From the sequence record MK250019.1: a stretch of 64,000 bases of DNA; one strand, 5' to 3'. The translations under genes were made by a program, and so were the position numbers. The notes beneath the pieces are model-generated. The model did no database searches. It was not told where the DNA came from and worked only from the letters and a program-made list of their open reading frames with translations. Positions 2,014 to 49,039 of the stretch are shown here, one piece after another (the first letter of the stretch is position 1; every line of letters begins with the position of its first letter).

Positions 2014-2035
2014 TNNNNNNNNNNNNNNNNNNNNN

Positions 2036-3958: not shown

Positions 3959-4894
3959 TTATAAATTAAATTGATCTTTAATTCTATCCCATTTTCTATG
4001 TAATATATCTGTACATTGTATAGCATAATTATATAACTTAATAACATCATTTTTTCTAGAAAAATATGCTTGTATACAATTATGATTATCTATACGTAAA
4101 TGAAAATTAATATTATAATACTAATTAATAAGATTAAATAATTCAATATATAAAGATTTCCAACTTATATGATTACTTATTGATATTGATATACTATTTC
4201 TCGATTTAGAAATACATCCATCACCATCTAGAAATCCTATTAAAAAATATATTAAATATACTTTATCATAGAATATTGAAATATCTGGAGGATTATATGT
4301 TTTCTACTTATTTATGAGATTAAAAGTTTTTAACCATTTTTCACAAAATGATTTATCTCCTATACGTATATAACAATTCATATATTTCCCAAAAGTAGAA
4401 TTTGCTTCATGTTCTCTAACATTTGTATTTAATTTATCTGCTAATAACTATAAATTATGTTTATCTTTATTAGAAAGAGATATAATAAATTCATTTCTTG
4501 CAGATATACAACCGTCAGCCATAAAAAATCCCCACCAATAATAGACTTCTTTATTATTTAAATTATTCATAAAATTTAAATTACCATGTCTACGACGATT
4601 TATATTATGTGAAAATTTCATTCGTTCACACGCTTGAAACTAAATAGCATTATAACTAAGATTTGGAAATGCATCTAATAATTCCTATTTAGATGCATTA
4701 TACCATAAATCTCTTAATTTTTCATTATTTTCATTAGTCCACTTAAAATTACAATGTATTTGTAATTCATGAGCTTTCTTTTTAATTGCACTTTTTGTTC
4801 TATTTGGTAATAATTTAATACATTCAGTTAATCCTGATATAGGATAATACTACTTTAATATATTAATTTCATTATCAGTCCAAAAATTATACAT
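3959..4894 (-). mobile_element. Free-standing double-motif LAGLIDADG homing endonuclease (311 aa, TAG=Gln)
   Basis: WGFFMADGCIS and IGFLDGDGCIS motifs; 936 nt open apart from at least 5 TAG codons. Confidence 0.85.
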
Positions 4895-6696: not shown

Positions 6697-7242
6697 TTAA
6701 GCAACTTCACGTACTTCCCAATCACTGATTTCTACATCATACTTTTCTTTGTTAATTGAAATAGATTTGATGTTCTTAAGCGACAATGTACGATATTCAA
6801 TAACTGCAGTACTTGCCTTTTTCTTTGGCATAAATCTTTCCATATATGCTTTGTCAACTACAGAAATTGGTTCATCATTAAGAATAATGTTATTCTTGCA
6901 GTAGTTGTTAGGAATGTAAATCAAACATACATTACCTGTACTGATATACTGCATGATGACATTCTTAACAATATGACGTCTATTTGTATCAGTTGCCTTA
7001 TAATCTTCTCCAAGAATTTTACTCATTGTTTTCTCATAATCCTGTCCAAAATGGAAAGTTACAGAGAAACTTGTACGAGGCTGAAAGTCATCCTTGATTC
7101 TTTCCTTTGGAAGACCATCGGTGTTGAACTTATTCAACTTAATATCTGATTCACCATAAACGGTTACATATTTACCATTACACTTAGCGTTTGCCATAAT
7201 GTTGATGAACTCGTCTACTGATGTGATAATATTTGTATTCAT
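6697..7242 (-). CDS. Hypothetical protein
   Basis: 181-aa ORF behind a TGTATCTTTG box. Confidence 0.75.
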   Translation of the reverse strand: MNTNIITSVDEFINIMANAKCNGKYVTVYGESDIKLNKFNTDGLPKERIKDDFQPRTSFSVTFHFGQDYEKTMSKILGEDYKATDTNRRHIVKNVIMQYISTGNVCLIYIPNNYCKNNIILNDEPISVVDKAYMERFMPKKKASTAVIEYRTLSLKNIKSISINKEKYDVEISDWEVREVA

Positions 7243-8223: not shown

Positions 8224-9240
8224 TTACATGATATATTGTAAAAGCATTCTTGTTTCTTCATCTTGCCCGAGTTTTTTATTAGCCTCTCTCAAAATCTAAT
8301 TAACTCGTGTTTCTGTCATATTGTTTTCTTCTGCAATTTGCCAGGTATTTTTCTCTGGACGACCATTAATAGCGTAGCATGCACAAACAATTTCACCATT
8401 TCTTTTACCCATAACTCTCTTGATATTATCTTCAAGTTCTCTTGTTATATCTTCATTTTCAAGGTTACTTCCAGGCTCATTGAAAACATTATTTGTTGTC
8501 ATATCACCTAATGTTACTTTAGAATCTCCATCATCTCCAACAGATTGATCTAAACTATTTGCACGAGCATTTGCTTTCATCGTCTATACAAATGAATCAT
8601 AAGTTAAATTAGGGTGTTTCTTAACTAATACATCATAAATATCATCAATATCAGGTTCATAACCATTCTTATTAAATAAACGTTCTTTTACACGAGCAGC
8701 TTCACGAGCAATACTACCCATATTACGAGGAACTGCCATATGACCACCTACTTCATCAACTGCCATCATAATCTCTCGACGAATATACCAAATAGCATAT
8801 GATACAAATTTTACATCTTTTTCTGGTGTACTTGGATCATATGTTTCAGCTGCTTTCATAAGTCCAATATTACCATATTGAATTAAATCTTCTTTAGGAA
8901 TATTAAGATTTTTATACTTATTAACAACAGTAACAACAAACGGAAGATTTGCAGAAACTAATTTATTTTTTGCTGCCTCTACCTATCTCTTATTTGACGA
9001 ATGCTGAATAATATCTGCAAGTTTGCATTCATCTTCATGTGTTAATCTTTGTTTCTTATTAATTGCTTTTAAATATGCTACAAATGATTTTGCTGTATTT
9101 TCATCCTATGTAATAGTAAAATCATCATGTAAATCCATATGCATTCCATTATTATCTTCATTAAGAGTATTTCGTAATGAACGAGAAATACCTTCCATAA
9201 GGCTATTATACAATGCTTTCTTTTTATTAATTACTCTCAT
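8224..9240 (-). CDS. RNA polymerase sigma-70 family factor (338 aa, 4 TAG=Gln)
   Basis: Region 1.2 YLKAINKKQRLTHEDE; region 2 LVSANLPFVVTVV..DLIQYGNIGLMKAAETYD..KFVSYAIWYIRREI; region 4 HTH TWQIAEENNMTETRVN(Q)I. TAGs at 9106, 8983, 8584, 8296. Confidence 0.9.
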
Positions 9241-10551: not shown

Positions 10552-10953
10552 TTAATATTCATCATCTATTTCATCACATAAATCTAAAAATTCCTCCTGT
10601 ATTGCATTATCCAAAATTTGAAATTCTCTGCGTTCGTTATATTCGTCTTCTGATTTAATCGCATCTGCCCAATCTGCATCAATATCATATACTTTTCTTG
10701 TATCTGTTGACATAACACGAATCATATTATGAATTTCTTTTTGCTTTCTGAATCCATAATCAGAAATATATCGTTCTACAAGAATTTCTTTTTTAAATAT
10801 AGGAATAATACAAATGAGTTTCGTATTCATTTCATCTTTCTCACATGAATGAATACCAGGAATCAACAATACAGACTTACCTGTTTCTACATTTATATTA
10901 TATGATGTATTACTGCGAAGAAATACAAGATCACCAATTTTAAATTCTGCCAT
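10552..10953 (-). CDS. Hypothetical protein
   Basis: 133-aa ORF after a promoter box. Confidence 0.7.
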   Translation of the reverse strand: MAEFKIGDLVFLRSNTSYNINVETGKSVLLIPGIHSCEKDEMNTKLICIIPIFKKEILVERYISDYGFRKQKEIHNMIRVMSTDTRKVYDIDADWADAIKSEDEYNERREFQILDNAIQEEFLDLCDEIDDEY

Positions 10954-16588: not shown

Positions 16589-18484
16589 TTAAGAGAAATC
16601 ACCACCGGTATCACCTCCACCAGTATCTGCAATTTCAGAACCACCAGATCCCATACCAGTATCACCACCAGAGAATGCTTCATCACCGCCAGAGAAGTCT
16701 CCTCCTCCACCGAAGTCACCTCCACCAGTATCACCTCCAGCGCCGAATGAATCATCAAATCCTGAACCTCCAGAATCACCACCGAAATCCATTTCGCCTG
16801 GTGCACCGTTACCTTGCTGCTCACCAACTTGCTTACCTATTTCTTGATGTTGTTTAATTGTTTTGGCTTGCTCTAATCGTTCAATAATTTCGCCTTGCTT
16901 ATATTTTTCATTAAGTGCAAAATCTTCATCAGACATACCTAGAAATTTCTCAATAAGGAATTTCATACTAAAGAATGGTTTATTTTCACCTAATTGAATT
17001 TGTGCTAAAGTACCTATAATTTCAGCACCCTATTTTAATGCTGTTCTTTCTTTTGCTTTAACAAATAAGTTTTCCTCATTGAATACAATACCTATACATT
17101 GTTTAAGCAATTCAGAATTAGCTAATTCTGGCATCATTAAACATATTTGCACCCATAAAGGTTTTAACAAAATTTCACGATACATAACGCGAATACGACT
17201 AATAAATCTACTAAATGCATATTCCTCTCGTGTTATACTTGCATCATCTCCACCTAATGGATGTGCGCCATCAGCAGCAGGATCAATCATAAATCTATTT
17301 GCTGGAACTTTTGTTTCTAATATAAAACGTCTCCAGAAATATTTCAATGGTGTAATATCACTTAAGTCATAACCTTCTGTAGGTATTTCTTCTATTGTCA
17401 TCGAATTACCATCACGAATTGGGAAAAAATGAGTTTTAGAAAATGAAAAACGTGGTTGACCATTTACAACCATTTCACCAGATATTTCATCGACTGTTGT
17501 TTCTTCATTCCAATCTGCTTTTACTTCATTAACCTTTGCACGAGCTTTGTCCTATGAAATATTACCTACAGGAATACCCACTTTAACACGTTTCTGTGAA
17601 TTCATAATATTCCAAACCATTCTTGATGTTTCAAGTTGTGTTAACATTGTATATGATCTGATTAATCCTTCTAGATAAGAAACTCGTGAATTTTCGCCAT
17701 ACATACCTGTTGACCATGATATATATACAATATTCGAATCTGGTATTTTTCTTTCCAACTATGCATCACCTCTATATTGATACCATACTTTTACTTCTTT
17801 TCCTGTTTCTGGATCTATTTCAATATCAGGTTCAAGAGTTGCTGCATCCAATTCTCTCATGCCTATAATACGTGTAGGTTTCATAAGATTATCAACAACA
17901 ATTTCAAATGCCAAATATCCTTCAACTAAGAATTTTTTAAAATAATTCCATGCATCATTTGATTTATCCCATCCATATGTAGAATATATAATCTTAAATG
18001 CTTTTTGACAATTTTTAATTAAATCATCTGCAGTTTCACCATTTGCACCTTTATAATTAGTGTTAAACTTTAATTTCAGAAGATTTAAATCTAACTATGC
18101 AAAATAATTGTTTTCATCTAATATTATAGTTTCATCTGAAATAGTATCAAGAACAAAAGAAATTGTTTGTTGTGAAGCGAACTATCTTAACTATTCACGT
18201 CTCTATTGATATGATAAATCATAATATGCATAAGATTGTTTTGTATTTTTAGTAATATCAACATACTATGAAAAAGAATTTTGATCCTAATTTAAACCAT
18301 CGTTAAATGGATATAATGAATCACCTGTATAATTATTTGTTTGAGCGGAACCTAAAGCTAATGATGTTTTAAGAATACTCTATGATGAATTTAAACTGAG
18401 AGAAGACAGATTAATAAGTGTATTGATTTTATTATGATCTGCTTTTCCTGGATTAAACTTTCTTGCTATATATTTTGTAGGCAT
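16589..18484 (-). CDS. T4 gp20-like portal protein (631 aa, TAG=Gln) with Gly/Asp-rich tail
   Basis: RVSYLEGLIRSYTML, KRVKVGIPVGNIS(Q)DKA, FFPIRDG..IEEIP, LKYFWRRFILETKVPANRF, ITREEYAFSRFISRIR follow the gp20 pattern; 1896 nt in frame. Confidence 0.85.
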
Positions 18485-18605
18485 TATTATGCTTTTATTT
18501 AGTTTTTATATTTATTATATATAAAAATAGGTAATATGTTTATGAAAAATACATATTACCTATCAAACAAAATTAAACAATTAAATATATATATTATGAA
18601 AAATG

Positions 18606-18997
18606 TGGAGACATCCGGAGTCGAACCGGAGTATTACTAACTTGTCAATAATAAACTATCTACGTGCGTATTTCTTAATTAGTTTTCATCATACATTCTT
18701 AGGAGTTAAACAGTTTAATGTCTTAATCACTCTTATTGGACAAAAAGTATAGTGAGTTTTATTTAACAGAGAAAACACTCACCGAACTCCGTGGCGATGC
18801 TCAACTTACCTTGTAAGGAGCAAATGCTTCAATGGGTTTATATTACCAATCCTACCGGATTAAGCTGCCATACGAAAATCAATTTCGTCGTCATTTAAAT
18901 TTATTTGCTAAATTTCTTTGTATTACTACAAAAGGCTTTTAACTTTCCTACACGATTTATTATCACATAATTAATAAGCAAAACCAAAAATGTCCCC
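18606..18997 (-). ncRNA. ssrA: tmRNA (one-piece), tag about (A)DDEIDFRMAA*
   Basis: GGGGACA/TGTCTCC acceptor with G3.U70; T arm CCGG-TTCGACT-CCGG; internal GAC GAC GAA ATT GAT TTT CGT ATG GCA GCT TAA. Confidence 0.9.
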
Positions 18998-19363: not shown

Positions 19364-20167
19364 TTAAACGAATATAGTTAATTCCATATTTTGTGACATT
19401 AAATTTCCAAATACATTCATAGGAAGTGTTTTTGAAAATGTATCATTAACATACAAATCAATATAATTTGCATAACATGATGACTTATTCAATTTATTTT
19501 TTCCTTTCTCTAGAACTGTAATTCTACCATACACAATATCACCTTCTTTAACATCACTTAAATAATTTGTTTTGATATGAATTCGTTTAACAATATATTT
19601 CGGTGTTGCTAAATAAATATCTCCATTGTTTGGAGCATTATCAATTGCATCCCATTTTGCCTTTCTTCTTGCTGCATTTTTTTGTTGTCTCTTATTGTAT
19701 TCAGCAATAGCATCTTCTTCGGTTTCAAAACAACGATTTCTTACATTAGTATGTGGTACATCACACACAGAAAGAAGATAATATCCCTCTCTAATTTTAT
19801 AATTATCATCTGCTTCTCTTACAAAACATACAGACCATTTATCTGCAGAAGAATATCTTATAATTTCTGAAGCACCTCTAACTGCAGGTGAAATTTCTTT
19901 ATTAAGCTTTACAAATACAATACGTCTACTATCTTTTGATATAGGATCTACTGTATATAATGATTTACATTCATTATCTAATACTTCTTTCTTGATAAGA
20001 AATCCATAAATAGTTCTACTAAAACTAAAATAGTATGATGATCTCCCACTTTCTTCATAATTACCAAGATATAAATCTGTATTATCAATATAATATTCAT
20101 CAGGAATATTTGATAATGATTTATTATGGTCATATGAATTTATAAATGTATATGATTTTGCTTTCAT
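19364..20167 (-). CDS. Hypothetical protein
   Basis: 267-aa TAG-free ORF after a promoter box. Confidence 0.75.
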   Translation of the reverse strand: MKAKSYTFINSYDHNKSLSNIPDEYYIDNTDLYLGNYEESGRSSYYFSFSRTIYGFLIKKEVLDNECKSLYTVDPISKDSRRIVFVKLNKEISPAVRGASEIIRYSSADKWSVCFVREADDNYKIREGYYLLSVCDVPHTNVRNRCFETEEDAIAEYNKRQQKNAARRKAKWDAIDNAPNNGDIYLATPKYIVKRIHIKTNYLSDVKEGDIVYGRITVLEKGKNKLNKSSCYANYIDLYVNDTFSKTLPMNVFGNLMSQNMELTIFV

Positions 20168-20828: not shown

Positions 20829-20866
20829 AATTGTAAAAAATTAAAAATATTACTAATGTCATGTCG

Positions 20867-20938
20867 TTGGGGATCCGAGACTCGAACTCGGCCTAAGAGT
20901 TTTAGAGACTCCTGTACTGACCACTATACTAATCCCCA
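20867..20938 (-). tRNA. Amber-suppressor tRNA, anticodon CUA, Gln-type body
   Basis: TGGGGAT/ATCCCCA (U1-A72, G2-C71, G3-C70); GGAGT-CT CTA AA-ACTCT; CCGAG-TTCGAGT-CTCGG. Confidence 0.95.
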
Positions 20939-20968: not shown

Positions 20969-21739
20969 TTATTCTATATAATCGCTTAATTTCTATTTGT
21001 AATGATAATATGTTGATTTACATACATTATATTTAGTTAAAAAATCTGATTCTGATATATTATTTACAATATCATTCTTCATATCTACTGTTAATTTACT
21101 GCAACCATTAGAATTAAATAACTATATCTTCTCATTATATTTAGATATTTTCTACATTAATTCTTGTTTATCACGTGATAATATATATCGTTTTTTAACT
21201 AAAAGATTACTGACACTACCTCTTGTAAAATTAACATTCATATCACGTTTTAATTGTTGTAATGATGTAGATGAAACAATATTCTTTGTATTTACATCAT
21301 AACAATATATTGTATGCCTTCCATCATTCTATTTTTCATATGATTTTTTCTAAACTATTAATTTCTATTCATCTGTGAATTTATATCCATCAATACCACC
21401 ATCACCACCTTTTGTTTGATTATAACCAGTAGCTCCATAACTATTATATTTACGAATATACTATTTTTCTAATAGATCTAATTGTTGTTTTATATCAGAC
21501 GTGATATAATTATCAAATGTTTTTAATATATATAATGAAAAGGAATCTATACCATATTTCTTAAATGCTTTATATATTGGCGCATTATATCTATTATTAA
21601 CAGAATTATTAATATGATGTAATAATCTTTTATGTAGATTTATACTCTAACCAATATAACACTTTTTATTTATATCATTCTAAATCATATAAATACCCGG
21701 ACACTATGGTATATTATTTATAATATCATCTTTACTCAT
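20969..21739 (-). mobile_element. GIY-YIG (Seg-like) homing endonuclease (256 aa, many TAG)
   Basis: GIYMI(TAG)NDINKKCYIG(TAG)S and GYNQTKGGDGG; 771 nt in frame. Confidence 0.9.
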
Positions 21740-21771
21740 AATAATTTTTAATATTTAATAACCATATTTTG

Positions 21772-21845
21772 TAGCCCCACTCAGATTCGAACTGAGTCAG
21801 CGAAAGTTAGAGTTTCGAATACTTAAACCATTACATCATAGGGCA
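21772..21845 (-). tRNA. Second amber-suppressor tRNA, anticodon CUA, Gln-type body
   Basis: TGCCCTA/TGGGGCT (1:72 mismatch); CGAAA-CT CTA AC-TTTCG; CTCAG-TTCGAAT-CTGAG. Confidence 0.93.
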
Positions 21846-29039: not shown

Positions 29040-29585
29040 TTACATTTTTAATATATCTTGCATATTAACTGGTTCTGTATTGGTATTTTTAGGTTTTCTT
29101 ACTATTTGTTTCACTTGTGGTTGTTCAAAATAAATACCACTCTTATTATATTTACCTTTATCATATGCTCGTTCAATAGCTTTACGAACTCTACGCTTTG
29201 TTTTACCATCCATCATATAATGATGCTGCTGATAATAAAGTTCACCTTGCTGATACATCATAGATTCAATAAACTGCTTTCTCTGCTCATGCTTTTGCTT
29301 TGTTTTTTCTCTTATATCTGATTCTGATTTTACTTTTGCAATAGCTGCTTGTGTAATAAGAGTATTCATACCAGATTCTTCATTTAACGTCTCTACTTGC
29401 TTATCTAAATTATTATCAATAGGTGTACCTGGAATTACTGTATTACCATCATCATATGCATATGATCTTTCAATTCTATCTTGTACTTTATCTTTAGATA
29501 ACAACATTTTATTTAATGTTTCATTATCAATAACTGAACCATTCTCAGTAATATAATTATTTAATGTGTTACTATATGCGGGCAT
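29040..29585 (-). CDS. Hypothetical protein
   Basis: 181-aa ORF. Confidence 0.7.
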   Translation of the reverse strand: MPAYSNTLNNYITENGSVIDNETLNKMLLSKDKVQDRIERSYAYDDGNTVIPGTPIDNNLDKQVETLNEESGMNTLITQAAIAKVKSESDIREKTKQKHEQRKQFIESMMYQQGELYYQQHHYMMDGKTKRRVRKAIERAYDKGKYNKSGIYFEQPQVKQIVRKPKNTNTEPVNMQDILKM

Positions 29586-29609: not shown

Positions 29610-29996
29610 TTAAAATGAATGTATATTATTATCAAGACTTGTCATTTCAGATGCTTTAAATTTACCATAAATCTTATTCCATCCTTTTGATAAACCGTTA
29701 CATAACATACTGGTATAATATGCAAATGGATTACTAAATCGTTCTGGATCAAAGCTTCGCCAATACATTGCAACATCCAACATTGCTGTCTGTATACAAT
29801 CTTCCTTATCCTCTTGACATTTATAATGTTTCTTTTTTGCTAAATTTTCAGCAATTAACTAAAGCATGACAACAGCATTATATGTAAGTTCATCTCTCTA
29901 TTTTGAAAGAACTATTTCTTTCATTAACTCTTTATTCTACACATATGGTTTTCCACCTTTAGTTTTAATACCTTCTACTTTACTAAAATCTTCCAT
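29610..29996 (-). CDS. T4 gp55-like late-transcription sigma factor (128 aa, TAG at codons 20, 33, 46)
   Basis: PYV(Q)NKELMKEI, ML(Q)LIAENLAKK and SFDPERFSNPFAYYTSMLCNG parallel gp55 YVNNKEL, MLIAEGLSKR and [21 protein letters not shown]. Confidence 0.8.
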
Positions 29997-30060
29997 GGTT
30001 TTTAAATAAAAATAGCTATTTCTTATTTTACTAAGAAATAGCTAAAAAGTTTTAATAAAT

Positions 30061-31146
30061 TTATTTATTAATTGCTTCCAAATGTTCCTTTTCATTAGGT
30101 GTTAAATTATCAGGAATCAAATAATGTACGCATACAAAATAATCTCCTCTTTGATTCATATCAGGTCGTTTAAGACCTTCACCAGATAATCGCATAACTG
30201 TACCTTCTTTAATACAACTCTGTAACTTTATTGTTTTTGATACACCAGAAGGTATATTAACTGTATATGAACAACCAAGTAATAGTTTATAATAAGGTAC
30301 ATGAATATGCTCTATTACATTCAAACCATCAACTTGATATTTGTTTGTATCAAATTTATAATCAGCTATAGCAATAAAATTACCATTCTGCCCAACTGAT
30401 TTCTTTGATTCTGATCCTTTACCACTATATACTTTATATTCACCATTCTGAATGCCTGTATTAAATTCAATTTCAATCTTTACTTCTTGCTTTTCAAATC
30501 CAGAACCACCACAATGATTACATTTATTTTCTACATAGAAACCTGTTCCATGACATAATGGACAAATTTCTTCTTGAATTGAAAATGTTCCTCTTCCTAT
30601 AAGAGACTGGTGAATAATTTTTCCTGCACCATGACACTTTGGACATGTTTTCTGCCCAGTTCCACCGGCACCATGACATGACGGACAACGTACATCTCTC
30701 TTATATTTAACAACCTTCTTAATACCATTAAATATATCTTCAATAGTAACAGGAATTTTCATTTGAATATCTCTGCCTGGTTGAACTTGATTTCTCTGTT
30801 GTTTAGCACCTCCAAAACCGCTAAATCCTCCAAATGGATTAAATCCTCCAAATGGGTCAAAACCCGATCCACCAAATGGATCAAAACCTGAACCACCAAA
30901 TGGATTTTGCTGACCATTTTCATCACCATATGTATCATAATTCTGTTTCTTCTGTGGATCACTCAATACTTCATATGCATGATTCACATCCTTAAATTTC
31001 TCTTCAGCTTCTTTTACTTCAGATGGTGATTTACCTTTCTGCATATCAGGATGATATTTCTTTGAAAGTTTTCTATATGCTGTCTTTAAGTCTTTCTCAT
31101 TACAATCTCTAGAAACACCTAAAATTTCGTATAAGTCTTTTGCCAT
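30061..31146 (-). CDS. dnaJ: Chaperone DnaJ
   Basis: J domain with HPD, G/F repeats, four CxxCxGxG zinc-finger motifs. Confidence 0.97.
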   Translation of the reverse strand: MAKDLYEILGVSRDCNEKDLKTAYRKLSKKYHPDMQKGKSPSEVKEAEEKFKDVNHAYEVLSDPQKKQNYDTYGDENGQQNPFGGSGFDPFGGSGFDPFGGFNPFGGFSGFGGAKQQRNQVQPGRDIQMKIPVTIEDIFNGIKKVVKYKRDVRCPSCHGAGGTGQKTCPKCHGAGKIIHQSLIGRGTFSIQEEICPLCHGTGFYVENKCNHCGGSGFEKQEVKIEIEFNTGIQNGEYKVYSGKGSESKKSVGQNGNFIAIADYKFDTNKYQVDGLNVIEHIHVPYYKLLLGCSYTVNIPSGVSKTIKLQSCIKEGTVMRLSGEGLKRPDMNQRGDYFVCVHYLIPDNLTPNEKEHLEAINK

Positions 31147-31341
31147 ATTTAATAACTATATAATAACATTTAAAATAAAAAGGGAACAGAATACAATCCT
31201 CTTGTATACGTTCCCTTCTTCAAATACTTTTACTCACTTTTTATAGTTTTCATTTATTCTAAATTAAAATATTGTATTCTATTATTTTATAGAATTTTTA
31301 GAAGTTAGTCTATAAATTTATAGACTAACTTTTATATCTTT

Positions 31342-33312
31342 TTAGACCTCTTCGTATTCTGCTTCCTGAACGTTATCATCTGTCTTTGAATTCTCAGATG
31401 TTGAATTATTTGCAGTTGCATCACCAAAACCTGCATTTGCAAACATATCGTTAGGGTTTTGTGCAGAATTTTCCTGAGGTTGAGAACCACCAGCATTCTT
31501 ATACATTTCCTCAACAATTGGCTTAAATACTGTCTCAAGTTCTACACGTGCAGATTCTGCTGCAACAGCATCCTTCTTAGAAACTGCATCAAGTACTGCA
31601 CTAATCTTTGTCTTCAATGTATCTTTCTTATCAGAAGGAATTGATGAACCTGTCTTCTCATCATCCATATACTTCTGAACCTGAGTTGCATACTGCTCTG
31701 CACCATTCAACTTATCAACTTCATCCTTCTTCTTCTTATCTGCTTCTGCAAACTTCTCTGCATCTGCCTTAATACGTGCAATCTCTTCATCTGAAAGTGC
31801 ATTAGGAGACTGAATTGTTACCTTCTGCTCTTTATTTGTACCCTTATCTGTTGCTGTTACTTCAAGAATACCATCTGCATTAATATCAAATGTTACTTCA
31901 ATCTGAGGAACACCCTTTGGTGCAGGTGCAATACCCTCCAAATTAAAATTACCAATTACCTTATTATCTGCAGACATTGGACGCTCACCCTGAAGAACCT
32001 TAATTGTTACTGCAGGCTGATTATCTACTGCTGTAGTAAATACCTGTGACTTACGTGTAGGAATAGTTGTATTTGCATCAATCAACTTTGCCATCTCACA
32101 ACCATTTACCTCAATACCCAATGAAATTGGTGTTACATCAAGAAGAAGAACTGAATCTTCTGTTGCATTACCAGCAAGTGTATTTGCCTGAATTGCAGCA
32201 CCAAGGGCAACAGCCTCATCAAAATTACAAGTCTTATTCAATGGCTTGTTAAATGACTTCTCCAATGCAGACTGAACTGAAGGAATACGAGAAGAACCAC
32301 CAACCAAAAGAATCTCACTAATCTGATCTTCTGTAATACCAGCCTTCTCTACTGCACGATGCGCAATATCAACAACCTTATTTGTCAAATCTTCAGTAAG
32401 TCTCTCAAATGTTGCACGATTAAGTGTCTTCATCAACATCTGTGGAACACCATCAGCAACAGTAATATAAGGAAGATTAATCTCTGTCTGAGTAGCAGTA
32501 GACAACTCACACTTTGCTTTCTCTGCTGCTTCTACAAGACGAGCATATGCCATCTTATCCTTACTCAAATCAATACCTGTATCGTTCTTAAACTCATCAA
32601 TAAGCCACTGAACAATAGCATTATCATAATTCTGTCCTCCAAGGAATACATCACCATCTGATGCAAGAACCTCAATCATACCATCAGAAATCTCTACAAT
32701 GGATACATCTTCTGTACCACAACCAAGGTCATTTACAAGAACAATCTTGTCACCATTTTTTGTATCAATATTAGAAGAAAGAACTGCTGCAGTAGGTTCA
32801 TTAATAATACGAAGTACATTCAAACCTGCCAACTGTCCAGCTACCTTAGTAGCATTACGCTGAATATCATTAAACCAAGCAGGAACAGTAATTACAGCAT
32901 CTTTACAATCATCTGTTCCATAATATCCCTTTGCAACTTCATACATATTCTTAAGAATCATAGATGAAATTTGCTCAGGTGAATATGTTTTATCGTCAAT
33001 CTTTAGACGAGGATTTCCATTTTCATCGACAACATCATATGTTACCATCTTCAACATTTTCTGTACATCTGTATCATCCCATTTTGCACCCATAAAACGT
33101 TTTACAAATGAAATGGTATTTTTTGGATTCATTACCATACCACGCTTTGCAGCTGCACCAATTTTTGTTTCATCACCTTTAATGTACACTACTGATGGCG
33201 TTGTCTTATAACCATCTGCATTTTCAATTACTTTAGCTTTGTTTGCCTCGATGATGGCTACCGCACTGTTTCCAGTACCTAGGTCCAAACCAATAACTTT
33301 CTTGTTGCTCAT
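31342..33312 (-). CDS. dnaK: Chaperone DnaK/Hsp70
   Basis: GLDLGTGNS, AVITVPAWFND, INEPTAA, LLVGGSSRIP, DINADGIL. Confidence 0.97.
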   Translation of the reverse strand: MSNKKVIGLDLGTGNSAVAIIEANKAKVIENADGYKTTPSVVYIKGDETKIGAAAKRGMVMNPKNTISFVKRFMGAKWDDTDVQKMLKMVTYDVVDENGNPRLKIDDKTYSPEQISSMILKNMYEVAKGYYGTDDCKDAVITVPAWFNDIQRNATKVAGQLAGLNVLRIINEPTAAVLSSNIDTKNGDKIVLVNDLGCGTEDVSIVEISDGMIEVLASDGDVFLGGQNYDNAIVQWLIDEFKNDTGIDLSKDKMAYARLVEAAEKAKCELSTATQTEINLPYITVADGVPQMLMKTLNRATFERLTEDLTNKVVDIAHRAVEKAGITEDQISEILLVGGSSRIPSVQSALEKSFNKPLNKTCNFDEAVALGAAIQANTLAGNATEDSVLLLDVTPISLGIEVNGCEMAKLIDANTTIPTRKSQVFTTAVDNQPAVTIKVLQGERPMSADNKVIGNFNLEGIAPAPKGVPQIEVTFDINADGILEVTATDKGTNKEQKVTIQSPNALSDEEIARIKADAEKFAEADKKKKDEVDKLNGAEQYATQVQKYMDDEKTGSSIPSDKKDTLKTKISAVLDAVSKKDAVAAESARVELETVFKPIVEEMYKNAGGSQPQENSAQNPNDMFANAGFGDATANNSTSENSKTDDNVQEAEYEEV

Positions 33313-33429: not shown

Positions 33430-34437
33430 TTATAAATTGTCTATTTTTCTAATAATTTTTTCTAATTTTATTTTCATATCATTTATATTAATAGGAAATA
33501 TTTCATAATAATTTAATTTATTATTAATAGCAATATTTCTTTTATTAACATCTCTATATCTCCAATTATATGCTGCATTTTTATAATAGTCTGATTTATT
33601 CATCCATTTATTAAATAAATTTATATCATCTAAATCGTTTTCATTAAATGGATGTTTTCCATGTGTCCAACTTGCATTAATTTCTATATATGTATTTTTA
33701 TCTTCAATATAAAAATCACAATTAAATGGATATTCTTCAGATTTATATTGTCTTATTACTTTATTATAATGTTCAATTAATATATTATATGCAATATCTT
33801 CATATTTAGATGTATTAAATGTATTATTACGTTCTTTTGTTTTATTTGATTTATTTTTAATATCATCTAATTGAAATACATTGTTTATATTAGAACCATA
33901 TTTATTATGTAATGTTTTTAAGACTTTATCTTTATTTAAAAATGCATATTCATAACCTGTTTTAGTTTTAATTGTATTACGAATTTTATCTCTTATTTCT
34001 TTTCGTTGTAAATTATAATTAACATTATAATTTTTTTGATTAGATAATTTACAATTAGATATTGATTTTTCTTTAATTAAGTCATTTTTCATAGGATTAT
34101 CAACTCCATACTTTTTTAAACAAGTATCCTTTTGTTTTCTTAATGTAATTTGTTTTCCTTTATCAGAATATTTACAATTATTAGAACAAAATGTTTTATA
34201 TCCTAATGAAAATCTTTCTAACTTTATTTCTTTATGACATATAGGACATAAAGGTCTATTGCTTAAATGATAAAGAATCATATAGAGACATTCTGATAAC
34301 TTTATATTTTCGATATGTTTAAATTTATCTTTTATATAAAGTTGATCTTCTGTATCTATATGATTCCAATATTGACAATTATTTTTAATAGAATTATTTT
34401 CTATATATTTTGATATTATCTAATTATCTTTATTCAT
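33430..34437 (-). mobile_element. Putative homing endonuclease: Zn-ribbon, KYGV repeat, C-terminal PD-(D/E)xK-like domain (335 aa; TAG at codon 6)
   Basis: CPICHKE..TFCSNNC, CLKKYGVDNP, YPFNCDFYIEDKNTYIEINASWTHG; start extended to the ATG at 34437. Confidence 0.7.
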
Positions 34438-40893: not shown

Positions 40894-41526
40894 TTAAAAA
40901 TCTTTTTTAAAAGTATCTACTTTTTTATGTTCACTATTAATATAATTTAATTCAGATATATATGAATCATAAAGAATTTCGCCAAACTTATCTTTCTTAA
41001 ATTCTTTTTCATAATTATCATCAGTAAATTCAATTTTTACTTTCTTTACACCCTTTCTAAATTTATTAATTATTTCAGGAGTAACATGCCAATAATTAAT
41101 ATTACGAGAAACATCTATAGAATTTGAATTATATGTAGATGTAATCCTATTCTTCCATACTGTTGATGTTATAGTAGGTTTAGCATATTGTATTGTAGTT
41201 TCTGTATATTCTGATGTAACTGAATGCAATTCTATAACTTCGTCATCCATTAATTTTACAAGCATTCTTGCATTATTAAATACACCTAATGGATATGAGG
41301 AATTCACATTTGTTATAACACAAAAACTTGTATCATTTGGTGAAATCCATGTTTGCAAACCAATATTTAAAATTTTACTATCAGTAAATTTACGTACACA
41401 TGTGCCTAATGCTTCTATTGTTCTCACAGAATCTACCTGTTTATCAACAACAATTTTACGTGTTTGAGCATTTACATTCGTAATAGTTGCAATCAACATT
41501 ACAAAAATTAACAAATACTTTTTCAT
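40894..41526 (-). CDS. Secreted protein (signal peptide)
   Basis: MKKYLLIFVMLIATITNVNA-Q cleavage pattern. Confidence 0.75.
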   Translation of the reverse strand: MKKYLLIFVMLIATITNVNAQTRKIVVDKQVDSVRTIEALGTCVRKFTDSKILNIGLQTWISPNDTSFCVITNVNSSYPLGVFNNARMLVKLMDDEVIELHSVTSEYTETTIQYAKPTITSTVWKNRITSTYNSNSIDVSRNINYWHVTPEIINKFRKGVKKVKIEFTDDNYEKEFKKDKFGEILYDSYISELNYINSEHKKVDTFKKDF

Positions 41527-41612: not shown

Positions 41613-42851
41613 TTATTGTTTATTAATCCATTCTTTTACTTCATTAATATTCCAAAATTCTATATAATTCAAATTATTCTACTATGATATATTCCTTTTT
41701 TTCAAATCTAATATAGTCCATGTATAAATAATATTATCATATTGTGACTTCTTACCATTTTTATGTGCATTAGAATTTTCTGCTTTTTCTTTTAAGTTAT
41801 TCAGCTCATTTAAATCATATTCATTATTTTCATTAAATGGATGATAATGATGATAATGAGATCCGTTATATTCAATATATAAATCTAATGATGGTATATA
41901 AAAATCACAATTAAATGGATACAATTCTGATTTATATTGTCTAATACAATCTGAATATTTTTCTTTTAATAAATCAAAACATACATCTTCTTGATATGAT
42001 ATATTAAATGAATTATTTAATAATTTTGTATTATAAATTTTTTTCTATATTTCATTACTACTTAATATAGATGAAATTAAATTTTTATAGTATTGTGTCT
42101 ANNNNNNNNNNNNNNNNNNNNNCTTTTCTAAACATGTATTTTTTATTTTATCTTTTACATATTTAAGTTGACCAATATTTACGATACTATTAATATCATC
42201 TTCATTAGAAGCATATTTTTTAATACATGTATCTAATGACTAATTTCGAAATTTTTGAACTTTAAATACAGAATCAACACCATACTTTTCTAAACATGCT
42301 TTATGAGTTTTTTCTATTTTTTCAGGAATCTAACCTGTATACTCAACACCATATTTTTGTAAACATGTTTCTTTTGATTTTTGTTTAAATATTTCAGATT
42401 TTAAAGGGGATGTTACTCCATATCTTTGTAAACATGTTTCTCTTGCTTTAATTCTATTAGAATAATGTTCATCTCCATATTTTAATAAACATGTTTCTCT
42501 TATTTTATTATTAATCTATTGCTTTTTATCTACATCACTATATATGTCTTTTAATACTTTTTTAACTGTTATACCATCTAACATATTTGCATGTTCTTTA
42601 CAACATGTTTTATTAAATAATTGATTCTTTTTACCATTCAAAAATTTAACAGGTTTTCCACAAATAACACATACAGGGCGAACCTCTATATTATACTGTA
42701 TTCTCTTAATTGTTTCTCTTAATGACTATGAATCAGTATAGCGATTATCTAAATATTCCTTATACTCCTCAGAAATATTAGTTAATCGCTATACATTTAC
42801 ATGTCCATTAGATTTAATAAAATAATCTAATATAATCTAATCTGTTACCAT
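41613..42851 (-). mobile_element. Putative homing endonuclease, paralog of 33430-34437, with tandem CLxKYGV repeats; spans an N gap; TAG=Gln
   Basis: MVTD(TAG)IILDY..., CVICGKP, repeated TCLQ(R/K)YGV, YPFNCDFYIPSLDLYIEYNGSHYH. Confidence 0.7.
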
Positions 42852-48522: not shown

Positions 48523-49039
48523 TTCACAAAAGTAAGTAAAATAATTACTGGTAATTTGAGAATGATAGAATATATAGATTTTTGATTAGTGAAATTTTGA
48601 TTAGTTAATATTATTTAGAATTTGTATAAATTAACATAAAAATAATATTGATTATCAATCAGTTATAAATTATTTTTTAACATTTATTAAAAATATTTAG
48701 AAAAATGTAGACTTTTTCTTAAAACNNNNNNNNNNNNNNNNNNNNNNNNNNNNNNNTTGAGATAGATATTATACATAATATGTAAAAAAATTAAATATAT
48801 TTTTTAATAATTTAATAAGGTAAGCCTTTCGGAAATGTAAATATATTTTGAATATGGTATAGAAATATTTTTTATTTTTATATCATATTTTTATTTTATA
48901 GTATATAAAACATTATTAATAATTATTAGTAAAATATATGATAAAGTTTTATATTTACTTATTATAATTACTTTAATTTGATATGTTATATTTTTACTAA
49001 ATAAATAAGTAAATGAAAATCTTTATTTGATAAAAAGAT

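What the first reader, a model, noticed from the sequence alone, without database searches (positions are those of the whole stretch)
29610..29996. Late sigma factor (gp55-like) hidden behind three amber codons
Seen: a 128-aa gene missing from the ORF track, with TAG at codons 20, 33 and 46 and blocks matching T4 gp55 (YVxNKEL; LIAExLxK; FDxxxxxNPxAY). Established: gp55 directs host RNA polymerase to TATAAATA late promoters. Inference: the late programme has a master switch at the translation level. No late sigma is made until UAG is suppressed, so the code switch lies upstream of late transcription rather than only protecting individual lysis or structural genes.
Basis: partly seen in the sequence, partly recalled or inferred. 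Interest (0 to 1): 0.85.

Follow-up and report, generated by a model that had tools for sequence, protein, structure and literature searches.

The report
Amber-gated late sigma factor in Lak megaphage
A giant gut phage (Lak-A2, host Prevotella) encodes a T4 gp55-type late sigma factor whose gene holds three UAG codons, so it needs the phage's own UAG-reading tRNA to be made, and the genes it probably switches on carry a T4-like late promoter and are themselves rich in UAG.

Summary
On the minus strand, 29996..29610 encodes a 128-aa protein with TAG at codons 20, 33 and 46 and a TAA stop. The window is Prevotella phage Lak-A2, a megaphage already known to read TAG as Gln. The protein belongs to the gp55 late-sigma family (PHROG 234 E 5e-11; the best structural match is T4 gp55 in its RNA polymerase complex, Z 12.8). 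Nine Lak-like lineages all keep in-frame TAGs in this gene, while the neighbouring DnaK and DnaJ genes have none. TAG positions drift and swap with CAA/CAG, so they behave as synonymous Gln codons.

New here: genome-wide, TAG-containing genes are preceded by ATAAATA (T4 late box TATAAATA) 20-45 nt before the ATG. TAG-free genes are preceded by a TAnnTTTG box, which I recall as the Bacteroidetes -7 box (Fisher p 1e-17).

Unshown are timing, selection for the TAGs rather than tolerance of them, and which promoter drives the sigma gene itself. It is a new variant of a known kind.

The parts
29610..29996 (-). gp55-family late sigma factor gene, 128 codons plus TAA stop. It has a sigma region-2-like domain (about residues 18-110) and a conserved C-terminal tail ...TSLDNNIHSF.
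29937..29939 (-). In-frame TAG, codon 20. It sits next to N21, the equivalent of T4 gp55 pocket residue N13. This column is Q, S, K, N or D in relatives.
29898..29900 (-). In-frame TAG, codon 33 (variable column: Q, E, K, G or A in relatives).
29859..29861 (-). In-frame TAG, codon 46 (variable column: TAG, CAA/CAG, H, W, Y, I or E in relatives).
30003..30044 (-). 13-bp hairpin (dG -15.9) followed by a T-run, ending 17 nt before the ATG. It looks like a terminator for DnaJ. The stem is kept in Lak-B through compensatory changes.
30062..30068 (-). ATAAATA box 72 nt upstream of the ATG. This is not the canonical 20-45 nt distance, it overlaps the DnaJ stop codon, and its role is unresolved.
20866..20938 (-). 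Suppressor tRNA(CUA) 'supA'. Its acceptor and D arms resemble the phage's own tRNA-Gln(CUG).
21771..21845 (-). Second tRNA(CUA) 'supB', called by ARAGORN only, with a U-U mismatch at the top of the acceptor stem. It lies 15 nt after a TAG-free gene.
30061..33312 (-). DnaK (31342-33312) and DnaJ (30061-31146) directly upstream. They are TAG-free here and in every orthologous locus that holds them.
29040..29585 (-). Conserved 140-187 aa gene directly downstream of the sigma gene in most lineages. It is TAG-free and of unknown function.
8224..9240 (-). rpoD-like phage sigma factor, 338 aa, with 4 in-frame TAGs and the ATAAATA box 42 nt upstream.
18509..18515 (-). Example of a canonical late box: ATAAATA 31 nt before the portal gene (16589-18484, 10 TAG). 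Others in the window precede the tail tube, peptidase, endolysin-like and 2499-aa genes.

Best explanation
The gene encodes the single gp55-family late sigma factor of Prevotella megaphage Lak-A2. It is a sigma region-2-only protein that should bind host RNA polymerase core and direct it to ATAAATA late promoters (T4: TATAAATA). Its mRNA holds three UAG codons that the standard-code host reads as stops, so the full protein is made only when the phage tRNA-Gln-like suppressor tRNA(CUA) decodes UAG as Gln. The late promoters precede genes that are themselves rich in UAG. Late proteins therefore depend on the code switch twice: once for the sigma that transcribes them and once for their own translation. 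That is a coherent feed-forward, AND-type arrangement. With n UAG codons the yield scales roughly as the n-th power of suppression efficiency, so three codons give a steep threshold.

Shown: the gene, its TAGs, its family and fold, TAG = Gln, the single suppressor locus, and the coupling between promoter class and code class.

Inferred: binding to Prevotella RNA polymerase, recognition of ATAAATA by this protein, the temporal order, and that the TAGs act as a timer rather than being merely tolerated.
For: Identity: PHROG 234 'late sigma transcription factor' E 4.9e-11, and it is the only such match in the 541-kb genome. T4 gp55 7d7c_F is the only PDB sequence hit. It is also the top fold hit: Foldseek prob 1.00, TM 0.65, rmsd 1.6 over 96 columns; VIA Z 12.8 against 9.5 for the next sigma. 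tblastn finds annotated gp55 genes in cyanomyoviruses, phiM12 and Xoo-sp13. Of the seven T4 promoter-pocket residues (PMC7892883), five are identical and one is conservative in the alignment (N21, L52, K55, F82, Y93, T95).

TAG = Gln: TAG swaps with CAA/CAG in the same columns across orthologues. supA resembles the phage tRNA-Gln(CUG). The literature agrees (PMC6784885, PMC8346664).

Gene-specific TAG status: LakA2/A1/C1/B plus seven wider lineages all carry 1-5 TAGs. Across the seven wider lineages plus Lak-A2, TAGs are 25 of 41 Gln-type codons. Adjacent DnaJ and DnaK have 0 of 9-25 each.

Late programme: ATAAATA lies 20-45 nt upstream of 61 of 133 genes with 3 or more TAGs, against 28 of 364 TAG-free genes. 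The reverse complement scores 1 of 133, and shuffles give mean 11, maximum 22. TAnnTTTG precedes 54 of 364 TAG-free genes against 2 of 133. Late-only versus early-only genes: 82/25 against 5/51, p 1.3e-17. The result holds after start correction (p 1e-15) and in divergent loci (6/15 against 2/39).

The code-switch parts lie in TAG-free surroundings: RF gene 287218-288354 and the tRNAs.
Against: There are no time-resolved data. Devoto et al. saw expression of TAG and non-TAG regions in all samples. TAG positions are not conserved beyond close relatives, so selection for the TAGs is not shown. Retention of all three between Lak-A and Lak-B is not significant given about 23% synonymous codon change. 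The promoter of the sigma gene is unresolved. Lak-A2 has no box at the canonical distance, while Lak-B, L014/15 and L018 have the late box at 30-37 nt. The promoter class of the suppressor tRNA operon is also unclear. No gp33 or gp45 homologue was found. The protein lacks the helix-loop-helix part of T4 gp55. Crisci et al. found no tRNA(CUA) in 13 of 51 Lak genomes. Abundant late proteins (major capsid protein, prohead protease) almost lack TAG, so TAG content is not simply 'late'.
Confidence: 0.6

Rival explanations
1. Neutral tolerance. The protein is the late sigma, but its TAGs have no regulatory role. The suppressor tRNA is available from the first minutes, being encoded at the end of a TAG-free operon. 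TAG is then just another Gln codon that drifts in by CAG-to-TAG changes under AT pressure in any gene not needed before suppression. Timing is set by transcription alone.
For: TAG positions move and swap with CAA/CAG. They sit in variable columns. Non-late genes such as homing endonucleases, the SbcC-like gene and UvsW also carry TAG. TAG-rich genes have few CAG codons. The literature derives the TAGs from CAG by synonymous change.
Against: TAG status is sharply bimodal: 127 genes with 5 or more Gln-type codons have none, and the rest centre on 30-60%. It follows promoter class. The sigma gene keeps TAG in every lineage although it is embedded among strictly TAG-free genes, and it is at the 92nd-93rd percentile for TAG density. 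Even if unselected, three TAGs still make synthesis conditional on suppression.
Confidence: 0.28
2. Throttle rather than timer. UAG decoding stays inefficient throughout infection. The TAGs then keep a regulatory protein at a low level, while abundant proteins avoid TAG.
For: The major capsid protein (one TAG, at codon 11 of my ORF) and the prohead protease (no TAG, late box) nearly lack TAG, while many low-copy or large structural genes are rich in it.
Against: Genes with 19-26 TAGs could not be made unless suppression becomes nearly complete. A phage RF gene, which the literature calls RF2, points to a real change of termination.
Confidence: 0.08
3. The ATAAATA promoters are read by another factor, such as the rpoD-like or ECF-like phage sigma or a modified host sigma, and the gp55-like protein has a different or narrower role.
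For: The genome has three sigma-like genes. No gp33 or gp45 partners were found. The protein is 57 residues shorter than T4 gp55.
Against: The box equals the T4 late consensus at 7 of 8 positions. Pocket residues that hold the flipped A-12, A-9 and A-8 in T4 are mostly conserved. Related huge phages have the same short form.
Confidence: 0.03
4. A dead gene or chance frame: the TAGs are real stops and only a 19-aa peptide is made.
For: Under table 11 the frame is broken three times.
Against: The frame is open for TAA/TGA with P about 2e-4. There are 30 synonymous against 2 non-synonymous changes versus Lak-B. It is conserved at 65-98% identity in many contigs. The fold is confident (pLDDT 87.5). 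The genome as a whole reads TAG as sense.
Confidence: 0.01

Closest known systems
Bacteriophage T4 gp55 (late sigma; PDB 7d7c/7d7d; PHROG 234)
   Same: It has a sigma region-2-like domain with the same fold. Most promoter-pocket residues are shared. It is a single small protein without regions 3 and 4. The cognate box is ATAAATA against TATAAATA. The C-terminus begins SLD, like the T4 sliding-clamp-binding motif SLDFLY.
   Different: It is 128 aa against 185 aa and has no helix-loop-helix segment. No gp33 or gp45 homologues were detected. The host is a Bacteroidota. The gene contains three UAG codons. From my own knowledge, laboratory amber mutants of T4 gene 55 replicate DNA but make no late proteins in non-suppressing hosts. 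The Lak gene is a natural counterpart whose suppressor is carried by the phage.
gp55 homologues of T4-like cyanophages and of other huge phages (LR756500, LR745206, LR756501)
   Same: The huge-phage homologues are the same short form (123-127 aa) with the same C-terminal tail. From my own knowledge, cyanomyovirus late promoters are written NATAAATA, which fits the Lak box AATAAATA.
   Different: Those genes have no in-frame TAG. The amber codons are specific to the TAG-recoded Lak clade.
Stop-codon recoding as a regulator of late and lysis genes (Borges et al., preprint 10.1101/2021.08.26.457843; Devoto et al. PMC6784885)
   Same: A standard-code host, a phage suppressor tRNA and release factor encoded in standard code, and recoded structural and lysis genes.
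   Different: That model is purely post-transcriptional and names lysis and structural genes. The texts I searched mention no sigma factor among the recoded genes, and no link between promoter class and code class. Table S7A of Devoto et al. gives no function for this gene.
Phage sigma cascades (Bacillus phage SPO1 gp28, then gp33/34)
   Same: Successive phage sigma factors redirect the host polymerase. Lak-A2 has a TAG-free ECF-like sigma plus two TAG-containing sigmas.
   Different: In SPO1 each step is transcriptional (my own knowledge). Here one step would also need a change of genetic code.

Membership tests
gp55 late sigma family (PHROG 234) | Significant match to the family profile | tested here: met
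   PHROG 234 E 4.9e-11 over residues 16-100. A six-frame search of the genome gives E 1.4e-9 with 3 TAGs inside the match. T4 gp55 itself scores 2.9e-69 on the same profile. Pfam Sigma70_r2 reaches only 19.9 bits, below its cut-off of 24.
gp55 late sigma family (PHROG 234) | Sigma region-2-like helical fold as in T4 gp55 bound to RNA polymerase | tested here: met
   AF2 model pLDDT 87.5. 7d7c_F is the top hit by Foldseek (prob 1.00, TM 0.65/0.61, rmsd 1.6 over 96 columns) and by VIA (Z 12.8, 109 aligned, rmsd 6.1, with the next hit at 9.5).
gp55 late sigma family (PHROG 234) | Promoter-pocket residues N13, L54, R57, F86, H95, Y97, T99 (PMC7892883) | tested here: met
   By the HMMER alignment they map to N21, L52, K55, F82, F91, Y93 and T95. 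Five are identical, R-to-K is conservative, and H-to-F is changed. Y93 is invariant, and L52, F82, F91 and T95 are nearly invariant in orthologues. This rests on a sequence alignment, not on a superposition.
gp55 late sigma family (PHROG 234) | Acidic helix-3 residues E70, D74, E77 that bind the beta-prime clamp helices | tested here: inconclusive
   The alignment puts D66, T70 and L73 there. An invariant acidic cluster (E62, D63, D66) lies on the same helix but in a different register.
gp55 late sigma family (PHROG 234) | Cognate TATAAATA-type -10 box upstream of late genes, with no -35 element | tested here: met
   ATAAATA peaks 30-39 nt before the ATG of TAG-rich structural genes (61/133 against 28/364, controls). 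That this protein reads the box is inferred.
gp55 late sigma family (PHROG 234) | Full T4 architecture: region-2 domain, helix-loop-helix motif and C-terminal clamp-binding motif | tested here: not met
   At 128 aa there is no room for the helix-loop-helix segment. The conserved tail TSLDNNIHSF only partly resembles SLDFLY. The short form is shared with other huge phages.
T4-type late transcription system (gp55 + gp33 + gp45 clamp) | Co-activator gp33 and sliding clamp gp45 encoded by the phage | tested here: not met
   There is no match to PHROG 254 (gp33), PHROG 223 or PF02916 (gp45) in the whole record, and none by phmmer with the T4 proteins. A gp44-like clamp loader is present, so a divergent clamp may exist.
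T4-type late transcription system (gp55 + gp33 + gp45 clamp) | Binding to host RNA polymerase core and promoter-specific initiation | not testable with these tools
   This needs biochemistry.
TAG-to-Gln recoded phage (code 15) with stage-specific code use | In-frame TAG read as Gln | tested here: met
   TAG alternates with CAA/CAG in aligned columns of this gene. The window's long genes open only with TAG as sense. Published for Lak.
TAG-to-Gln recoded phage (code 15) with stage-specific code use | Phage-encoded suppressor tRNA(CUA) and release factor in standard-code surroundings | tested here: met
   The genome has two tRNA(CUA) genes, both in the window. supA is tRNA-Gln-like. The RF gene is TAG-free among genes with the early box.
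TAG-to-Gln recoded phage (code 15) with stage-specific code use | Suppression starts after early genes and before recoded genes are needed | not testable with these tools
   Only contigs of RNA libraries were available. They contain the gene with its TAGs intact but carry no timing information.

The most novel reading that the evidence does not exclude
In Lak megaphages the change of genetic code is wired upstream of the transcriptional late switch. Early host-type promoters (TAnnTTTG) express TAG-free genes and the suppressor tRNA and release factor. Only then can the triple-amber gp55-like sigma be translated. It then opens ATAAATA promoters in front of genes that themselves need UAG decoding. 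This would be a two-layer coherent feed-forward loop in which the number of amber codons sets the threshold. It would also be a natural counterpart of the classical T4 amber-55 mutant, with the suppressor carried by the phage.
Probability: 0.35. Interest if true: 0.8.

Novelty: new variant of a known kind. Interest (0 to 1): 0.62.

Why it matters
Stop-codon recoding in gut phages has been proposed as a post-transcriptional brake on lysis and structural genes. If the late sigma factor itself sits behind amber codons, and late promoters mark the recoded genes, then code switching and transcriptional switching are one coupled circuit. That yields concrete, testable predictions: the order in which tRNA(CUA), sigma protein and late mRNAs appear, and the effect of replacing TAG with CAA. 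It also gives a practical annotation rule for these mostly unannotated 540-kb genomes, because the promoter box predicts the code class. Finally, it shows that gp55-type late transcription extends to megaphages of Bacteroidota.

Tried and rejected
1. The 161-aa reading from ATG 30095 was rejected.

2. Pseudogene or chance frame was rejected.

3. gp33 and gp45 searches with PHROG 254, PHROG 223, PF02916 and phmmer with T4 proteins found nothing. PHROG scans of the two genes upstream of the clamp loader were also uninformative.

4. A search for a third (middle) promoter motif among genes lacking both boxes found nothing convincing.

5. A C-terminal motif scan for other proteins ending like the sigma tail found no meaningful second case.

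7. RNA evidence was limited to Logan contigs. Three metatranscriptome runs hold the gene with its TAGs unchanged, and their contigs end within about 15 nt of the ATG and hairpin. Contigs cannot show transcript ends, and DNA carry-over is possible.

8. My first reading, that replication genes carry one TAG each, was corrected. Most single TAGs lie in the first 10% of my over-extended ORFs.

9. The fold of the conserved downstream gene came out at low confidence (pLDDT 64.6), so I ran no fold search on it.

10. The generic sigma-70 promoter scan was at chance level in this AT-rich DNA.

Full report
**Source of the window.** The window is identical to Prevotella phage Lak-A2 (MK250019.1, 541,299 bp, circular, unannotated record), positions 124,001-188,000. 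Lak megaphages are already known to read TAG as glutamine while their Prevotella hosts use the standard code (Devoto et al. 2019, PMC6784885; Crisci et al. 2021, PMC8346664; Borges et al. preprint). For genome-wide statistics I fetched the record in 50-kb pieces. The window has three runs of N (2015-2035, 42102-42122, 48726-48756). I re-masked those positions in my working copy before any analysis and never read or used their letters. None lies near the finding.

**The observation.** On the minus strand an ATG at 29996 opens a 128-codon frame ending in TAA at 29612-29610. It has TAG at codons 20, 33 and 46. No ORF of 80 aa or more is listed there under table 11. TAA plus TGA make up 6.5% of codons over all frames, so a 128-codon stretch free of them has P about 2e-4, and 1 of 20,000 shuffles stayed open. 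Against Lak-B1 (89% nucleotide identity) the gene shows 30 synonymous and 2 non-synonymous codon differences, with all three TAGs retained. The frame is therefore under purifying selection as read through the TAGs. A 161-aa version starting at 30095, used by some public gene calls, is unlikely. It overlaps DnaJ, crosses a conserved hairpin, and loses its frame in Lak-B because of two 1-nt indels.

**What the protein is.**
- It matches PHROG 234 'late sigma transcription factor' (E 4.9e-11), the family to which T4 gp55 belongs. It is the only such match in the whole genome.
- The only PDB sequence hit is T4 gp55, 7d7c chain F.
- An AlphaFold model (pLDDT 87.5) has 7d7c_F as its best structural match. 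Foldseek gives prob 1.00, TM 0.65, rmsd 1.6 Å over 96 columns. VIA gives Z 12.8, with the next hits, region 2 of cellular sigmas, at 9.5 or less.
- tblastn finds annotated gp55 genes of T4-like cyanophages, Sinorhizobium phiM12-like phages and others.
- Shi et al. (PMC7892883) identified T4 residues that form the pockets for the flipped bases of the late box. In the alignment N13, L54, F86, Y97 and T99 are identical in Lak (N21, L52, F82, Y93, T95). R57 is K55 and H95 is F91.
- The Lak protein is 57 residues shorter than T4 gp55 and lacks its helix-loop-helix segment.
- Its last residues, TSLDNNIHSF, are almost invariant among orthologues. They begin like the T4 clamp-binding motifs: gp55 SLDFLY, gp43 SLDFLFG, gp33 TLDFLL.
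- Other huge phages (LR756500, LR745206, LR756501) have the same short form with a similar tail and no TAG.
- I found no gp33 or gp45 homologue, although a gp44-like clamp loader is present.

**The TAG codons.**
- All three are kept in Lak-A1, A2, C1, B1 and B7 and in seven IMG/VR contigs.
- Seven more divergent lineages (65-83% identity, loci L012-L020) all carry in-frame TAGs, 1 to 5 each, but in shifting columns. Column 20 is TAG, CAA/CAG or Ser. Column 46 is TAG, Gln, His, Trp or Tyr. The Gln in 'CIQTAM' is CAG in Lak-A2 but TAG in most of the wider loci.
- TAG therefore behaves as a synonymous Gln codon placed at variable positions.
- supA (20866-20938) shares its acceptor and D arms with the phage tRNA-Gln(CUG). 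It and supB (21771-21845, less canonical and not confirmed by Rfam) are the only tRNA(CUA) genes in the genome.
- What is conserved is the gene's class. In every lineage the sigma gene has TAG. Across the seven wider lineages plus Lak-A2, TAGs are 25 of 41 Gln-type codons. The adjacent DnaJ and DnaK have none among 9-25 Gln codons each.
- In Lak-A2 its TAG density is at the 92nd percentile of genes of 100 aa or more.

**Two promoter classes that follow the two code classes.**
- Using a simple ORF caller with TAG as sense (588 genes, 224 with TAG; TAG share per gene is bimodal), I compared upstream regions.
- Genes with three or more TAGs are preceded by ATAAATA, with its 5' end peaking 30-39 nt before the ATG: 61 of 133 against 28 of 364 TAG-free genes. 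The reverse complement scores 1 of 133, and composition-matched shuffles give mean 11, maximum 22. This matches the T4 late box TATAAATA at 7 of 8 positions.
- TAG-free genes carry a different, highly conserved element...TGTATCTTTGTA..., in 43 near-identical copies. Its core TAnnTTTG equals what I recall as the Bacteroidetes sigma-A -7 box (my own knowledge, not looked up here). It occurs in 54 of 364 TAG-free genes against 2 of 133.
- Genes with only the late box: 82 with TAG, 25 without. Genes with only the early box: 5 with TAG, 51 without (Fisher p 1.3e-17).
- TAG makes up 33% of Gln-type codons in late-box genes and 2.7% in early-box genes.
- The result survives a start-codon correction (p 1e-15) and recurs in the divergent loci (6/15 against 2/39).
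- In the window the late box precedes the portal, tail-tube, peptidase, endolysin-like and 2499-aa genes.
- I found no mention of this coupling, or of a recoded sigma, in the papers searched. Table S7A of Devoto et al. gives no function for this gene.

- That no full-length late sigma can be made without UAG decoding follows directly from the sequence and the host's standard code.
- T4-like replication genes are TAG-free (gp44-like, ligase, DinG, TOP2, a candidate primase) or have one TAG within the first 18 codons of my ORFs, probably upstream of the true start (gp43-, gp32-, gp47-like). The RF gene and an ECF-like sigma are also TAG-free. Ligase, DinG, TOP2 and the primase candidate were assigned only by length match to Table S7A and were not verified by profile search.
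- This places the sigma on the recoded side of a divide that replication genes mostly do not cross. It fits a code switch lying between replication and late transcription.

**What remains open.**
- No timing data exist.
- The TAG sites drift.
- TAG also occurs in homing endonucleases, including one wedged between the two suppressor tRNAs, in an SbcC-like gene (19 TAGs), in UvsW (1 internal TAG) and in an rpoD-like sigma that itself has a late box.
- The major capsid protein and prohead protease nearly lack TAG.
- The sigma gene's own promoter is unresolved. In Lak-A2 the nearest ATAAATA is 72 nt upstream, ahead of a conserved hairpin and T-run. In Lak-B, L014/15 and L018 the late box sits 30-37 nt upstream, which suggests positive autoregulation.
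- RNA-library contigs from three studies contain the gene with its TAGs intact and break near its ATG. They cannot prove transcript ends.

**Verdict.** The gene is a new, short, amber-containing member of the gp55 family. The proposed mechanism is plausible and is now backed by an independent genome-wide signal, but it is not demonstrated. I rate it a new variant of a known kind, with interest 0.62.

Noticed in passing
genome-wide; in the window e.g. upstream of 40894-41526, 19364-20167, 10552-10953, 6697-7242 (minus strand): A roughly 45-nt early-promoter-like element (T-run, ATTTG, A-rich spacer, TGTATCTTTGTA) occurs in 43 near-identical copies. It lies 25-62 nt before TAG-free genes only.
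   Followed up: partly
window 20969-21739 (-): A GIY-YIG homing endonuclease gene with 10 in-frame TAGs sits exactly between the two suppressor tRNA(CUA) genes. Two more TAG-rich homing endonucleases lie at 3959-4894 and 41613-42851.
   Followed up: partly
window 18605-18997 (-): A phage-encoded tmRNA (Rfam RF00023, 58 bits; tag peptide DDEIDFRMAA) lies just downstream of the suppressor tRNA region and upstream of the portal gene.
   Followed up: no
window 8224-9240 (-): An rpoD-like phage sigma factor (PHROG 351, E 2e-43) carries 4 in-frame TAGs and has the late box 42 nt upstream. A third, ECF-like sigma (record 219155-220105) is TAG-free.
   Followed up: partly
window 29040-29585 (-) and orthologues in L012, L016-L020: A conserved 140-187 aa gene follows the sigma gene in most lineages. 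It is TAG-free, has a basic HHYMMDGKTKR motif, and has no family match. Its fold is low-confidence and mostly one long helix. It might be a partner of the sigma.
   Followed up: partly
loci L015, L019, L020 (orthologous DnaK regions): In several Lak-like lineages the HSP70/DnaK gene is called in two pieces, separated by a 356-361 aa gene. That gene is rich in TAG (5-8) in L019 and L020. This suggests a mobile insertion. In Lak-A2 DnaK is intact, with a homing endonuclease just upstream at 33430-34437.
   Followed up: no
window 30061-33312: DnaK and DnaJ are richer in G+C (about 30-33%) and prefer CAG over CAA, unlike the rest of the genome. This fits acquisition from a host. Hairpin plus T-run structures precede DnaJ and follow DnaK.
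   Followed up: no
record MK250019.1 211337-211409 (outside the window): A tRNA with anticodon UUA (ochre-suppressor-like) is present. Crisci et al. report this in all Lak genomes, without evidence that TAA is recoded.
   Followed up: no
genome-wide (my ORF calls): Of 66 ORFs with a single TAG, 25 have it in the first tenth and 12 in the last tenth. The former are probably over-extended starts. The latter could be genuine TAG stops of genes translated under the standard code.
   Followed up: partly
record 511840-513825 and 109754-111508 (outside the window): The ORFs assigned by length match to Table S7A as major capsid protein (one TAG, at codon 11) and prohead protease (no TAG, late box) almost avoid TAG, although they should be late. 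TAG may be avoided in the most abundant proteins.
   Followed up: no
window 2015-2035, 42102-42122, 48726-48756: Three runs of N. I left them unread and re-masked them in my working copy of the public record. The gene 41613-42851 was searched only upstream of its N run.
   Followed up: no
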